A DNA stretch of 63,743 nucleotides, the filler included, from Octopus bimaculoides (lineage: Eukaryota): NCBI RefSeq assembly GCF_001194135.2. It is 6 parts of 6 records of this genome, joined end to end, with 100 filler letters (N's around TTAATTAATTAA, not from the genome) between each part and the next. Parts side by side here need not be neighbours in the genome. Positions count along the whole stretch, not along the records: positions 1 to 5,467 come from NC_068981.1; 5 more parts are not named here. One strand, given 5' to 3'. How positions within the stretch are numbered: the stretch's first letter is position 1; each line of letters starts with the position of its first letter. Under the pieces are notes generated by a model. That model searched no databases. It saw only the letters and a program-made list of their open reading frames with translations, and had not been told where the DNA came from. Positions 1 through 5,511 of the stretch are shown piece after piece. The position numbers were made by a program, and so were the translations under genes.

Positions 1-190
1 ACAACCAGAACCCTAAGTAAGACATGTGTAAAATTTGAATGAAATTGGTTGTGTAGTTCTCGAGTTTTAGGGAAACACACACACACACACACAGACAGAC
101 AGACAGACAGACAGACACACATTCTCATTTTTATATATATAGATAACCACATGTGTGTGCGTGCGTGAGGAGTGATGTGTGTGCATGTGT

Positions 191-226
<36 letters not shown>

Positions 227-241
227 ATAGACACATACACA

Positions 242-314
242 CGGTGACCGGTAAATTCCACTGCGATAAATTCCACCCACGGAAAATTCCACCAGGTAAA
301 TTTCACCTTAGGTG

Positions 315-1246: not shown

Positions 1247-1697
1247 AAGTAAAAACAAATAGAAGAAAAATTCTTGAAAGTAGCCAAAAGAGATCTCTTG
1301 AACTTAAATTGACCCGCCTGAAAGAGGACTCAATGAAAAGCTGTCAGAGAGAAACTTCGTCATTGGAAGCGGGTAACTGAAAAACTAATTAACAAGTCAT
1401 TAAGACGAAATCAATCAGTATGAAGGGATTGTGAGATCAGGGGACAGTCAATGAAAAAGAGGACAGTTGATCGTTCCCAGGAAGATATGGCTTACGAGGG
1501 TGGGTGGACTGGAAATTTCATCGGTTGACTATGAAGGAGTGATGCTAGTGTTGTGAAACTTTGCATGTATTAATTTCAGCTCTTCTTATTAATGACTACA
1601 TTGTTTCTTTCCAGGTAAACTGACATCTGACTGTTCAAAGAACACTTCAAATGTAATTAGCAGCGGCGTCTCTTGAAAATAGACATTTGATGTCGTG

Positions 1698-2159
1698 GAG
1701 TGAAGATTATTTGCCAACATAACATGGCAGTCCTGGTTTAGGACGAATGTTGCTGTAATTTAGCCCCAGAAGACATCGTCTCCAGCTCTGTGTCCTTATA
1801 TTTTCGAACAAGGGAATCTAGCACCCTCATTCAGCTCAAAACAATATCTGTGTAACGCGAAATTGGCAGCGCTACCTCTAGCCGAGCAATTATTCTGTGC
1901 TGATGAAGGGAAATAACCTAGAAATTGCAATACACAGATATTGTTTTGAGCTGAGTAGGGGTGCTAGATTCCCTTGTTCGAATATATAAGAACACAGATC
2001 CTGTCGTATAGCCAGCTGGAGACGATGTCTCTTGGGGCTAAATTACAGCAACATTCGTCCTAAACCAGGACTGACATGTTATGTTGGCAAATAATCTTTA
2101 CTCCAAAGTACTGTTGTTGAATATCTCTCGTTGTGAGATTTACAAGTAGAAATTTTCTA
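1698..2159 (+). mobile_element. Non-coding foldback insertion carrying a hammerhead ribozyme (Penelope-like pLTR or retrozyme-like)
   Basis: 13-bp TSD ATTTG(A/G)TGTCGTG at 1685-1697 and 2160-2172. Inverted arms at about 1697-1854 and 1931-2104, with an HHR motif between and overlapping them. Confidence 0.8.
1894..1938 (+). ncRNA. Type I minimal hammerhead ribozyme motif (CUGAUGA core, AUA cleavage triplet)
   Basis: Stem I UCUGUG/CACAGA; CUGAUGA at 1900-1906; stem II AGG/CCU followed by one extra A; GAAA at 1921-1924; palindromic stem III AUUGCAAU; predicted cut after 1932. Confidence 0.7.
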
Positions 2160-2439
2160 ATTTGGTGTCGTGCTGTTAACAATTACCGGCAGAAAAAGAG
2201 TTTAGCCTCAAACAACACTCATGCTGTCATGGTTGCTACATTAGGGAATGATGCTCTAGCTTTATCAACAGTGTAAAAATGGGCAGCTAAATTTAGGAGG
2301 AGAAGGGAGGGTCTCGGAGATGATCCTGCCTCTGGACGTCCTGAAACTGCCTCCACTGAGGACAACACTGATCGTGTTCCCTACATACTGATGGATGACA
2401 GACGATTGACTATAAATTAAATATCCAATGCTATTCGTA

Positions 2440-2644
2440 TTAGGTTAGTGCATAATTATTGTGGCTTTTTTTTTCAATAAATTTTATTCAACAAAAAATT
2501 TAAACAAAACGCCAAGCAGAAATAGAAGTAGATGGTGAATATGCTCCGGAATAATCATTTAAAGATGTTTTTTTAAATGTTGTTATTGTTTTTGTTGAAT
2601 AAAATTTATCGATAGAAAGCCGCAATAATTATACGGCAACCTAA
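2440..2644. mobile_element. 205-bp mariner-derived MITE with HsMar1/MADE1-like TIRs
   Basis: TIR TTAGGTT(A/G)GTGCATAATTATTG(T/C)GGC, extended to about 60 bp. TA duplication at 2438-2439 and 2645-2646. Removing it restores the host transposase frame (NAIRIFLEGDENILHDRLGMTK). Confidence 0.9.
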
Positions 2645-3929
2645 TATATTCCTTGAGGGAGATGAGAATATTCTGCACGATAGACTTGGCATGACGAAGG
2701 TTTCTGCTTGGTGGGGGTCACGTCTTCTGACACCTGATCAAAAGCACGCTAGGATGATCACATCACGGGAAAATCTGACATTGTTTCAGGCAGATCCAGC
2801 TGGTTTCCTTAAGCGTTTCCTAACCCAGGAGACAAAGAGACAATTCATGCAATGGAAACACCCCTCTTTACCTGCTCCAAAGAAGGCCAAAGTCGTTTCA
2901 TCTGCAGGGAAGGTGATAGCCTCCGGTTTTGGGGATGCAAAATGCATTGCGTTGAAAGTGCCACACTATCAATGGAGAATACTATGCTAACTTACTGAAG
3001 CAGTTACAAGAGACTGTCAAGACCAAACGCGCAAGAAAACTGACGGAAGGGGTTTTGTTTCATCAGAACTATGTTCTAACAAACAAGTCCTCGGTTCCAA
3101 TGGCTGCTGTGCATGACTGGTTTTTGAACTGATTGATCACCCTCCCTATTCTCCTGAATTGGCCCCATGTGACTATCATCTGTTCCCCAACATGAAAAAT
3201 CACATGGCTGGGGATCAGCATCAGTGATGATGACGTCATGTATACTGTTGATGACTTTTGGGACCAAGAAGACGAAAGCTTCTTCACAAACGGGATCCAA
3301 GTACTCCAACATCGATAGAAGAAGTGTGTGTACCACAAAGAGGGATTAGGTTGACAAACACACCTCATTTCATCACATTCCATGAGAGTATCTCGATCAG
3401 CCTTTGAACTTCTCAGCCGACTCCCCGTAATACTGGAACAATAAATGTCTGCAAGACCTTCTTAAGGTTTACAGGATGATTAACAAAACAAGATGAGTGC
3501 TTTCACAACCTTGTTGACAAGCGGGTAGCCACTCAGATTGAACTGTAAATTAAAAAGAAAAAAAGAAAACATAGATACACACACACATACATAGACACAT
3601 AGATACATAAACACGTACACACACACACACACACACACACACATGCAGGTATCGAAAAAATGCCTGGTCTGAAAAGAAGGCGTTTAAACCGGATGTAGCC
3701 TCGGTACCAGAAATCTGATAGGAGCATTAATGGTGATATTGCTGAGGGTGTGGTAGGAAAGTTTCAAGACAGGAAAGCGTCAGAAAGAGCTTTAATACTG
3801 ACACAAAAACAAATTTTCCGTCGACAGTAACTTACAAATCTTTCGCAAAAAGCACTCCGTGGATGATATAAATAAACTACCTTAAACTGATTGCCATTCA
3901 CACAGGGAAGAAATGTTAGCCTCACAGCA

Positions 3930-4110
3930 GAATCATCATCATCATCATCATCGTCGTCGTCGTCGTCGTCGTTTAAGTCCGTTTTCCATGCTGGCATGGG
4001 TTGGACGGTTTGACTGAGGATATGTAAGCCAGGAGGCTGCACTAGGCTCCAATCTGATCTGGCACGGTTTCTACAGCTGAATGCCCTTCCTAATGCCAAC
4101 CACTCCACAA
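3930..4110 (-). mobile_element. RTE-type LINE/SINE 3' end with (GAT/GAC)n tail
   Basis: CATCATCATC...GTTTAAGTCCGTTTTCCATGCTGGCATGGGTTGGACGG...GCTGAATGCCCTTCCTAATGCCAACC resembles RTE 3' ends (recognised from memory). Confidence 0.55.
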
Positions 4111-4459: not shown

Positions 4460-4596
4460 AAATAGATGGATAGATAGATAGATAGGTAGATAGATAGGTA
4501 GGTAGATAGAGAGAGAGAGAGATACATACATACATACATACATATAGACCAATACATGCATCACACATACATACACCATACACACACACACATACC

Positions 4597-4770
4597 ACGG
4601 GCTTCCCCACAGTTTCCGCCTACCAAATTCACAACTATATTCACTCAGGAGGCATTGTTTATCCCGGGACCATAGTAAATAACACTTGCCCAAGATGCCG
4701 CACTGTGGGACTGAACCTGAACTCATGTGTTTGTAACCCGATCTTCTTAACCACACAGTTACACCTACAC
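4597..4770 (-). mobile_element. tRNA-derived SINE head (family A)
   Basis: Homologous to 14105-14281; reverse complement contains GTGTGGTTAAGAAG...GGTTCAGGTTCAGTCCCACAGTGCGGCATCTTGGGCAAGTGTT. Confidence 0.75.
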
Positions 4771-5511
4771 CTATACCATACAAGATGAGAACAAATATCC
4801 GTCAAATGTAAATAATGTAAATAATGAAATACGTATTTTAGAAATTACATTCACGTAATATGACACGTTTCCATAGTTACAACTTAATAATATTTCACAA
4901 TAAAATCAGAAATTCTGTTTATTCTTGTTCATCACAACTCTACCCCTCACTCCAAGTGTTTATTTCACTCGACCTTCATCATCTCAAGTACTGTCACCTA
5001 TTCCAAGATTCACTCTTTCCCTAAGTATACAAAACTTTGATAATTACACAGAAACCACTTAGATCCTTTCCAGGAATTATTTATGAGAAAGACTGGCATT
5101 TTTTGCTTGCTTTGATTGGCTAAGAACTGCTGCCAAAGTAATTGATGTCAGACTAGCTTTGGCAATTGATTCTCATGCCACTCCTTTGAGGATGTCAACT
5201 TAGAATTGTACATCTCTTGTCACTTGTGCTAATTCATTTGTCATACTTTGGCTGAGAGACCTCTGTCTGTACTTGTGCGTATGTGAGAGAGAGAGAGAGA
5301 CAGAGAGACAGAGAGAGAGAGAGAGAGAAAGAGACAGAGAGAAAGGCAGGCAGAGTGTGTGTTTGTGTGCGTTTGCGTGTGTGCGTGTGTGTGTTTGTGT
5401 GTGTGTGTGTGTGTGTTTGTATGTGCAAGAGAGAGAGAGAGAGTGTGTGTGTGTGTGTGTGTGTGTGNNNNNNNNNNNNNNNNNNNNNNNNNNNNNNNNN
5501 NNNNNNNNNNN

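What the first reader, a model, noticed from the sequence alone, without database searches (positions are those of the whole stretch)
1698..2159. TSD-flanked, non-coding foldback insertion carrying a hammerhead ribozyme
Seen: a 462-bp insert flanked by a 13-bp duplication (ATTTGATGTCGTG 1685-1697 / ATTTGGTGTCGTG 2160-2172). Removing it restores the mariner N-terminus IWCRAV. It has ~160-bp inverted arms and a type I HHR (stem I UCUGUG/CACAGA, extendable by CAAU/AUUG; CUGAUGA; GAAA; palindromic stem III AUUGCAAU; AUA cut site). Established: minimal type I HHRs with palindromic helix III mark Penelope-like element pLTRs and non-autonomous retrozymes. Inference: this is a non-autonomous ribozyme retroelement mobilised by a PLE reverse transcriptase, a family I cannot place among named cephalopod repeats. 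Caveat: stem II has an extra A before GAAA, so this copy may be impaired.
Basis: partly seen in the sequence, partly recalled or inferred. Interest (0 to 1): 0.85.

Follow-up and report, generated by a model that had tools for sequence, protein, structure and literature searches.

The report
Hammerhead-ribozyme retroelement insertion in octopus mariner
A 462-bp piece of a ribozyme-carrying retroelement inserted into a dead mariner transposon in an octopus genome; its hairpin shape is the usual footprint of Penelope-type integration, so it is a new example of a known kind of element.

Summary
Window 1698-2159 is an insertion with a 13-bp target-site duplication (12/13). Two related mariner copies, one from Octopus vulgaris, carry that 13-mer once, so they serve as empty sites.

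The insert has three parts:
- an inverted 159-nt copy (1696-1854);
- a longer direct copy (1855-2105);
- a 54-bp tail at one end only (2106-2159).

Head-to-head 5'-truncated copies, a one-sided tail and a variable TSD are the published signature of Penelope-like element (PLE) integration. The foldback is therefore most likely an integration footprint, not a designed hairpin.

The hammerhead at 1894-1938 (+) is real by structure. A covariance model built only from four experimentally validated animal retrozyme hammerheads finds it full-length as the single best hit in 99 kb (17.3 bits, E~0.008; next 9.9 bits). Twelve of 13 model pairs form. A self-cleaving axolotl retrozyme has U·U at that position. 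Rfam's own hammerhead models report nothing.

Not tested, because no octopus DNA search was available: other copies, covariation, and whether the source is a non-autonomous retrozyme or a truncated autonomous PLE.

Verdict: new member of a known kind, modest interest.

The parts
1685..1697 (.). Left copy of the 13-bp target-site duplication (ATTTGATGTCGTG)
   Evidence: 12/13 match to 2160-2172. The 13-mer is single-copy in two related mariner copies.
1696..1854 (-). Inverted, 5'-truncated copy of the element (sense strand is minus). It corresponds to 1931-2105 and lacks the ribozyme core and the tail.
   Evidence: Inverted repeats I1 and I2. Arm alignment: 9 substitutions plus a 16-nt indel. 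The inner end maps 2 nt from the predicted ribozyme cleavage site.
1855..1930 (+). Unique central segment. It is the extra 5' part of the longer direct copy and holds the 5' strand of helix I, the catalytic core, helix II and helix III.
   Evidence: Not repeated elsewhere in the window. Lies between the arms.
1894..1938 (+). Type I hammerhead ribozyme motif: helix I UCUGUG/CACAGA, CUGAUGA, helix II AGGG/CCUA (A·A at 10.1/11.1), loop 2 AAAUAA, GAAA, helix III A-UUGCAA-U, A17. Predicted cleavage is between 1932 and 1933.
   Evidence: Covariance model R1, built from four validated retrozyme hammerheads: 17.3 bits, E~0.008, full length, best of 99 kb. Pair table. Descriptor statistics. The dimer fold forms the 8-bp helix III. 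Rfam models give no hit.
1887..1943 (+). Extended helix I: upper 4-bp stem CAAU/AUUG beyond a 3-nt/1-nt internal loop (UAU / U)
   Evidence: The MFE fold of 1885-1945 has the same layout as I read in axolotl Ax353 (CAGC-UUC-ACCUCA ... UGGGGU-U-GCUG) from the sequence.
1931..2105 (+). Part of the direct copy that is duplicated in inverted form as the left arm
2106..2159 (+). One-sided 54-bp 'tail' beyond the inverted repeat, A+T-rich (30% GC), no similarity elsewhere in the window
   Evidence: PLE tails are described.
2160..2172 (.). Right copy of the target-site duplication (ATTTGGTGTCGTG)
1495..3421 (+). Host: a degenerate mariner copy. The insertion sits at codons 4-8 of the transposase.
   Evidence: 78-83% DNA identity to the O. 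vulgaris mariner in L001. Protein homologues. HTH_48. Frames.

Best explanation
An RNA carrying a canonical type I hammerhead ribozyme was reverse-transcribed into the 5' end of a mariner transposase gene. The source RNA was either a retrozyme-like non-autonomous element or the terminal repeat of a Penelope-like element. The enzyme was of the Penelope type (reverse transcriptase plus GIY-YIG endonuclease).

Inferred steps:
1. The endonuclease nicked both target strands 13 bp apart, in an A/T-rich AAAATTT stretch.
2. cDNA synthesis was primed on both strands from two internal start sites in the RNA, equivalent to 2159 and 2105.
3. One cDNA copied 305 nt, through an uncleaved or religated ribozyme site.
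4. The other stopped at or next to the ribozyme cleavage site and the helix III palindrome.
5. The two copies were joined head to head.

This leaves what is seen: an inverted short copy, a longer direct copy, a tail at one end only and a 13-bp duplication.

Shown: the insertion, the duplication, the empty sites, the inverted copies, the tail and the ribozyme motif. Inferred: the enzyme, the two priming events and ribozyme cleavage in vivo.

The copy is old (the arms differ by about 6%) and sits in a dead transposon, so it probably has no present function. Its ribozyme has a weakened helix II and would at best cleave slowly, probably as a dimer in multimeric transcripts.
For: Insertion and TSD with two empty-site paralogues.

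Inverted copies and a one-sided tail. Published PLE anatomy matches:
- an inverted 5'-truncated copy next to the direct copy, and a 30-40 bp tail at one end only;
- an inverted pLTR, a 31-bp tail and 8-10 bp TSDs; head-to-head is the commonest arrangement; pLTRs are sufficient in trans;
- a purified PLE protein cleaves and extends both strands and starts reverse transcription at two internal sites, and the interval between those sites is the tail.

Hammerhead:
- CM R1, built from validated retrozyme hammerheads only, gives a full-length hit of 17.3 bits, E~0.008 in 99 kb. The background maximum is 9.9 bits.
- 12 of 13 pairs are standard. The only mismatch is at the position where the self-cleaving axolotl HHR_Amex2 has U·U.
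- The descriptor rate is about 0.05 per Mb or less in random sequence.
- The dimer fold forms the 8-bp helix III, -30.3 versus 2 x -10 kcal/mol.

The ribozyme is in sense orientation upstream of the tail, as in PLEs.

The inner end of the inverted copy lies 2 nt from the predicted cleavage site. My estimate is about 1-2% by chance for a site placed at random in the 305-nt unit.

No ORF longer than 55 codons in the insert, and both arms share the stops. GC is 41%, in the retrozyme range.
Against: - No second copy of the element was found. Family membership, consensus and covariation are therefore untested.
- Rfam hammerhead models give no match, even at E<=10 on a 101-nt query.
- The G10.1-C11.1 pair, called highly conserved, is replaced by A·A.
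- The tail is 54 bp, against the 30-40 bp usually quoted.
- No PLE reverse transcriptase is present in the window or in the 23 kb of octopus DNA fetched (a weak test using a sequence recalled from memory).
- For the one PLE studied in vitro, ribozyme cleavage was not needed for insertion, and no reads ended at the cleavage site. The 'run-off at the cleaved end' step is therefore speculative.
- E-values from R1 are rough: four seed sequences and a short calibration.
Confidence: 0.65

Rival explanations
1. The insert is simply a heavily 5'-truncated copy, plus its inverted partner, of an autonomous Penelope-like element. On this reading 1855-2159 is the 3' end or pLTR of a full-length element that encodes RT and GIY-YIG elsewhere in the genome. 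There would be no separate non-autonomous 'retrozyme' family.
For: PLE insertions are mostly 5'-truncated, and hammerheads sit in their pLTRs near the 3' end. Retrozymes and pLTRs are sequence relatives. The insertion anatomy fits equally well.
Against: Published comparisons assign canonical type I hammerheads (6-bp helix I, 4-bp helix II, short palindromic helix III) to retrozymes. They assign minimal hammerheads (long helix II, short helix I, no helix III) to autonomous PLEs. This motif is of the canonical type. The region downstream of the ribozyme has stops in all frames in both arms, unlike the anole PLE, where the unit's 3' end overlaps the ORF start. Some insect, rotifer and shrimp PLEs do have a small palindromic helix III, so this is not decisive.
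Confidence: 0.25
2. The hammerhead-like motif is a chance or decayed resemblance. The insert would be an unrelated short retroposon (SINE-like or LINE-mobilised) that acquired an inverted duplication by twin priming or snap-back synthesis.
For: Rfam finds no hammerhead. The basal helix II pair is mismatched. Only one copy is known. Variable-length TSDs are also made by LINE machinery.
Against: All invariant core positions, the canonical spacing and 12 of 13 pairs are present. The independent CM hit is well above background. The chance rate of even a relaxed descriptor is about 0.05 per Mb or less. There is no poly(A) or simple-repeat 3' end and no tRNA-like head. LINE twin priming normally joins non-overlapping segments, whereas here 160 nt are duplicated. 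A one-sided tail is a PLE hallmark.
Confidence: 0.08
3. It is a DNA transposon of the foldback or MITE kind, moved by a transposase that recognises its long inverted repeats.
For: 160-nt inverted arms, no coding capacity and flanking direct repeats.
Against: The inverted repeat is not terminal: 54 bp lie outside it at one end only. To my knowledge a 13-bp TSD matches no cut-and-paste superfamily. A true MITE in the same mariner (2440-2644) shows the expected terminal TIRs and TA duplication, for contrast.
Confidence: 0.02

Closest known systems
Metazoan non-LTR retrozymes (Cervera & de la Pena 2020, PMC7229834; Li et al. 2026 preprint, 10.64898/2026.07.22.740005)
   Same: Canonical type I hammerhead with the same dimensions as the validated coral, mussel and axolotl ribozymes. 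Non-coding, low GC (41%), TSD longer than 4 bp, proposed PLE-dependent mobilisation. Solo (monomeric) copies are described.
   Different: This locus has no tandem repeat and only one ribozyme copy. It has an inverted partial copy instead. Monomer length, circular RNA and copy number are unknown. The 10.1/11.1 pair is A·A.
Penelope-like element insertions with inverted pLTR and tail (Arkhipova et al. 2013, PMC3846280; Craig et al. 2021, PMC8557442; Frangieh et al. 2024, PMC11167929)
   Same: Head-to-head inverted 5'-truncated copy, an extension ('tail') at one end only, a short variable TSD, a hammerhead in sense orientation upstream of the 3' end, and an A/T-rich nick site.
   Different: No RT/GIY-YIG coding sequence is attached. 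The tail is 54 bp rather than 30-40 bp. The ribozyme is the canonical type, not the minimal type reported for most animal PLEs.
Axolotl HHR_Amex2 (retrozyme Rtz_353)
   Same: Mismatch at the base of helix II (U·U there, A·A here), 2-bp helix III with a palindromic tetraloop, A at position 17, and a 6-bp helix I followed by a 3-nt/1-nt internal loop and a 4-bp upper stem (my reading of the sequence). It cleaves weakly as a monomer (22% in 1 h) and better as a dimer.
   Different: No primary-sequence similarity outside the core. The octopus motif has not been assayed.

Membership tests
Hammerhead ribozyme, type I | Invariant core C3 U4 G5 A6 N7 G8 A9 ... G12 A13 A14 ... A15.1-U16.1, H17 (not G) | tested here: met
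   CUGAUGA 1900-1906, GAA 1921-1923, A1924-U1931, A1932
Hammerhead ribozyme, type I | Open helix I formed by the sequence 5' of the core and the sequence 3' of the cleavage site | tested here: met
   Six Watson-Crick pairs 1894-1899/1933-1938, plus 4 more after an internal loop. Present in the MFE fold.
Hammerhead ribozyme, type I | Helix II closed by the conserved G10.1-C11.1 pair | tested here: not met
   A1907·A1920 mismatch. The other three pairs (G·U, G-C, G-C) form. A validated natural ribozyme with U·U at this position cleaves.
Hammerhead ribozyme, type I | Short helix III with palindromic loop, allowing dimeric action | tested here: met
   AUUGCAAU 1924-1931. The dimer cofold forms the 8-bp helix. 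The feature is described.
Hammerhead ribozyme, type I | Match to curated Rfam hammerhead covariance models | tested here: not met
   No hammerhead family reported at E<=10 in 5.5 kb or in a 101-nt query.
Hammerhead ribozyme, type I | Match to a covariance model of experimentally validated animal retrozyme hammerheads | tested here: met
   R1: 17.3 bits, E~0.008 (rough), full length. Next best in 99 kb is 9.9 bits.
Hammerhead ribozyme, type I | Covariation among homologous copies; self-cleavage | not testable with these tools
   No other copy could be retrieved. No wet assay.
Non-LTR retrozyme | Tandem repeats (dimer to multimer) of a 170-400 bp monomer, each with a hammerhead | tested here: not met
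   No tandem or direct repeat in 1600-2250, and a single ribozyme. Solo copies are known for the family.
Non-LTR retrozyme | Non-coding, GC below about 45-50%, TSD longer than 4 bp when present | tested here: met
   Longest stop-free stretch is 55 codons. GC 41%. TSD 13 bp.
Non-LTR retrozyme | Multi-copy family expressed as linear and circular RNA | not testable with these tools
   No cephalopod genome or transcriptome can be searched by DNA here.
Penelope-like element (insertion signature) | Partial tandem and/or inverted 5'-truncated copy adjoining the main copy | tested here: met
   Inverted copy 1696-1854 head-to-head with 1855-2105. Criterion.
Penelope-like element (insertion signature) | Short extension ('tail', 30-40 bp) at one end only | tested here: inconclusive
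   A one-sided extension is present, but it is 54 bp. Without other copies it cannot be shown to be element sequence between two start sites.
Penelope-like element (autonomous) | ORF with reverse transcriptase and GIY-YIG endonuclease | tested here: not met
   No such ORF in the insert or the window. tblastn with a recalled PLE-like sequence finds nothing in the window, L001 or L002 (weak test).
Foldback/MITE DNA transposon | Inverted repeats at both termini, directly next to a TSD of family-specific length | tested here: not met
   The right arm ends 54 bp before the TSD.

The most novel reading that the evidence does not exclude
The shorter, inverted copy ends within 2 nt of the predicted ribozyme cleavage site. 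If many genomic copies of this family show inverted or 5' junctions piling up at 1931-1933, that would be a genomic footprint of in vivo hammerhead cleavage. An alternative cause would be priming driven by the helix III palindrome. Either way, the ribozyme would be shaping Penelope-type integration products. That is a role not demonstrated so far: in the one PLE studied in vitro, cleavage was dispensable. It would also define the first described cephalopod retrozyme family.
Probability: 0.2. Interest if true: 0.55.

Novelty: new member of a known kind. Interest (0 to 1): 0.3.

Why it matters
The locus is a clean, datable example of a hammerhead-bearing retroelement in an octopus, with paralogous empty sites available. 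For this group I found no published description of retrozymes or PLE ribozymes beyond a count of Rfam hits in the giant squid.

Its anatomy links a canonical retrozyme-type ribozyme to a Penelope-type integration footprint at a single locus. That supports the current view that animal retrozymes are mobilised by PLE enzymes.

The near coincidence of the inverted junction with the cleavage site gives a cheap genome-wide test of whether the ribozyme acts during retrotransposition.

For genome annotation, such foldbacks should be read as paired truncated copies, not as hairpin genes or MITEs.

Tried and rejected
1. Rfam cmscan of the whole piece and of a 101-nt sub-window found no hammerhead. The only hits were microsatellite-driven microRNA-like matches below threshold.

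2. Search for other copies through spurious ORFs. Stop-free stretches from all six frames of the insert were concatenated and searched against 5.8 billion proteins, with no hit.

The arm 24-mer also found nothing in prokaryotic genomes or viral contigs. These collections are not expected to hold cephalopod DNA.

4. Look-up of two window ORFs to recover the source contig: not on record.

5. The third protein search used an O. vulgaris zinc-finger ORF, in the hope of harvesting more octopus loci. It returned only vertebrate and other poly-zinc-finger proteins and wasted the search.

6. Only one octopus locus (L001, 23 kb) was obtained. It has no copy of the insert and no hammerhead.

7. tRNA-derived SINE idea rejected: ARAGORN finds nothing.

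8. Idea that the region after the ribozyme encodes the N-terminus of a PLE ORF, as in the anole element, rejected: stops occur in all frames and are shared by both arms.

9. Idea that the 56 nt at 1618-1672 belong to the insertion event rejected: they are native mariner 5' UTR, present in a distant mariner copy.

10. The tail and the central segment have no similarity elsewhere in the window above the shuffle level.

11. MAFFT misaligned the window motif with the four reference hammerheads by one column. The CM alignment was used instead.

12. The supplements of Craig 2021 and Cervera 2014 are not held.

Full report
**What is there**

Window 1698-2159 is a 462-bp insertion. It is flanked by ATTTGATGTCGTG (1685-1697) and ATTTGGTGTCGTG (2160-2172), a 12/13 match.

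The surrounding sequence is a decayed mariner:
- The N-terminal frame matches HTH_48 (E=1e-4, just under Pfam's cut-off).
- A stitched translation of 2670-3360 finds mariner transposases at up to 62% identity (E=1e-81). The best named hit is from Octopus vulgaris.

I fetched that O. vulgaris locus (L001, OX597827.1). It shows the same mariner family at 78-83% DNA identity. It also holds eight copies of a SINE-like repeat that is present in the window at 3960-4107. The window therefore comes from an octopus or a close relative.

In the O. vulgaris copy the transposase starts ATG GAC AAA ATT TGG CAT CGT GGT GTT (MDKIWHRGV), and the 13-mer occurs once. A more distant mariner (L002) also has it once. 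These two paralogous empty sites confirm both the insertion and its duplication.

The 56 nt at 1618-1672 that the O. vulgaris copy lacks are native mariner 5' UTR, not part of the event.

**Anatomy of the insert**

- The inverted repeat runs 1696-1854 against 1931-2105. It consists of 92 nt at 96% and 68 nt at 93%, with 9 substitutions and one 16-nt indel overall.
- As RNA the whole insert folds at -285 kcal/mol, z=-28.
- Between the arms lie 76 unique nucleotides (1855-1930).
- Beyond the right arm lie 54 nucleotides (2106-2159) that have no partner on the left and no similarity elsewhere in the window.
- There is no tandem repeat, no tRNA-like part, and no open frame longer than 55 codons. 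The stop codons are shared by both arms.

The inverted repeat is therefore not terminal, which argues against a foldback or MITE transposon. A genuine MITE in the same mariner (2440-2644) has terminal inverted repeats and a TA duplication, and makes a useful contrast.

**How this shape arises**

The published structure of Penelope-like element (PLE) insertions fits point by point:
- Copies are mostly 5'-truncated.
- An inverted 5'-truncated copy often lies immediately next to the direct one, head to head.
- A 30-40 bp 'tail' is often present at one end only (Craig et al. 2021).
- Rotifer examples have an inverted pLTR, a 31-bp tail and 8-10 bp duplications. pLTRs alone suffice for mobilisation in trans (Arkhipova et al. 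2013).
- A purified PLE protein cleaves and extends both target strands. It starts reverse transcription at two internal sites of the RNA, and the interval between those sites is the tail (Frangieh et al. 2024).

I therefore read the insert as two cDNA copies of the 3' part of one kind of RNA. A longer copy on the + strand (1855-2159) started at the distal site. A shorter copy on the - strand (1854 down to 1696) started at the proximal site. The two were joined head to head.

On this reading the foldback is a by-product of integration. The enzyme and the two priming events are inferred, not shown. The 54-bp tail is longer than usually quoted.

**The ribozyme**

The motif lies on the sense strand of the longer copy, 173 nt upstream of the proximal 3' end.

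Rfam's curated models report no hammerhead, even at E<=10 on a 101-nt query. This counts against it.

I then took the four retrozyme constructs whose self-cleavage sites are marked in the supplement of Cervera & de la Pena 2020 (coral Amil224, mussel Mg353, axolotl Ax353 and Ax330). I aligned their hammerheads and built a covariance model without the octopus sequence. I searched the window plus 44 kb of other animal DNA with filters off.
- The best hit is 1894-1938 (+): full length, 17.3 bits, E about 0.008. That E-value is rough.
- Everything else scores 9.9 bits or less and is fragmentary.

The alignment puts the motif in the canonical register:
- helix I UCUGUG/CACAGA;
- CUGAUGA;
- helix II AGGG/CCUA with loop AAAUAA;
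- GAAA;
- helix III A-UUGCAA-U;
- A17.

Twelve of 13 model pairs are standard. The exception is A1907·A1920 at 10.1/11.1.

The same position is U·U in axolotl HHR_Amex2. That ribozyme cleaves 22% in an hour as a monomer and much better as a dimer.

Helix I continues after a 3-nt/1-nt internal loop into a 4-bp stem (CAAU/AUUG). I read the same layout in Ax353.

Two copies of the motif are predicted to pair through the 8-nt palindrome of helix III: -30.3 kcal/mol against -10 for each monomer.

A descriptor loose enough to accept the irregular helix II gives:
- one hit in the window;
- none in L001 or L002;
- one in 20 Mb of composition-matched random sequence with G·U allowed in helix I, and none with Watson-Crick pairs only.

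I conclude that the motif is a genuine hammerhead of the canonical animal type. Its helix II is weakened. Whether this copy or the family consensus cleaves is untested.

**A detail worth following**

The inner end of the inverted copy pairs with position 1931. That is the last base of the helix III palindrome and lies 2 nt before the predicted cleavage site (A1932|C1933). For a site placed at random in a 305-nt unit this closeness has a chance of roughly 1-2% (my estimate).

Two explanations are possible:
- run-off of the second cDNA on a self-cleaved RNA, plus a 2-nt TA microhomology;
- palindrome-mediated self-priming, which has been proposed for PLE head-to-head junctions.

For the anole PLE, cleavage was dispensable in vitro and no reads ended at the site. 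This stays a lead that only many copies can test.

**Retrozyme or truncated PLE?**

The literature assigns canonical type I hammerheads to non-LTR retrozymes and minimal ones to autonomous PLEs and Terminons. It now treats retrozymes as non-autonomous relatives of PLE pLTRs, with solo copies known.

The canonical architecture, the lack of coding sequence and the low GC (41%) favour a retrozyme-like source.

However, this locus is not a tandem array. Some PLEs carry a small palindromic helix III. I also could not compare the unit with any octopus PLE. I give the retrozyme-like reading a modest edge over a truncated autonomous PLE. The shared statement, a hammerhead-bearing RNA inserted by PLE-type machinery, gets about 0.65.

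**What could not be done**

No tool here searches cephalopod DNA. All of the following failed to find a second copy:
- the six-frame ORF trick;
- exact-pattern scans of metagenome, prokaryote and viral collections;
- look-ups of window ORFs.

A third protein search meant to harvest octopus loci was wasted on zinc fingers. Copy number, consensus, covariation and association with an RT/GIY-YIG ORF therefore remain open.

**Novelty**

The kind is known. Hammerhead_1 hits have been counted in the giant squid genome, but I found no description of cephalopod retrozymes or PLE ribozymes. This is a new member of a known kind, of modest interest, with one testable lead: the junction at the cleavage site.

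Noticed in passing
window 2440-2644 (TA at 2438-2439 and 2645-2646): A second, independent insertion in the same mariner. It is a ~205-bp MITE with ~26-bp terminal inverted repeats (TTAGGTT...GTGGC / GCCGC...AACCTAA) and a TA duplication. It is absent from the O. vulgaris mariner copy.
   Followed up: partly
window ~3960-4107, with (GAT)n/(GAC)n at 3929-3972: SINE-like repeat in minus orientation with a trinucleotide-repeat tail. Eight copies at 77-88% identity lie in 23 kb of O. vulgaris DNA (L001).
   Followed up: partly
window 4524-4782: Another dispersed repeat, with several 66-70% copies in the O. vulgaris locus L001. It overlaps a spurious 148-codon ORF on the minus strand.
   Followed up: no
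window 73-250, 930-1243, 3588-3648, 4519-4576: Rfam matches to mir-297, mir-3149, mir-466 and similar families fall on (CA)n/(CATA)n/(GATA)n microsatellites, all far below gathering scores. They are low-complexity artefacts.
   Followed up: yes
window 1999-2014 versus 1787: The right arm of the foldback has 16 nt that the left arm lacks. The other differences between the arms are 9 substitutions, 7 of them transitions. If transcribed, the 160-bp duplex would be a plausible ADAR or Dicer substrate, but the spectrum is not specifically A-to-G.
   Followed up: partly
window 1618-1672; L001 about 12155: The O. vulgaris mariner copy lacks 56 nt of 5' UTR that this copy and a distant mariner (L002) retain. 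This is a deletion in that copy, unrelated to the insertion.
   Followed up: yes
L002 16873-18243: The unrelated ENA contig fetched through the mariner search carries a LINE-type reverse transcriptase ORF (RVT_1). It is not a Penelope-like element.
   Followed up: partly
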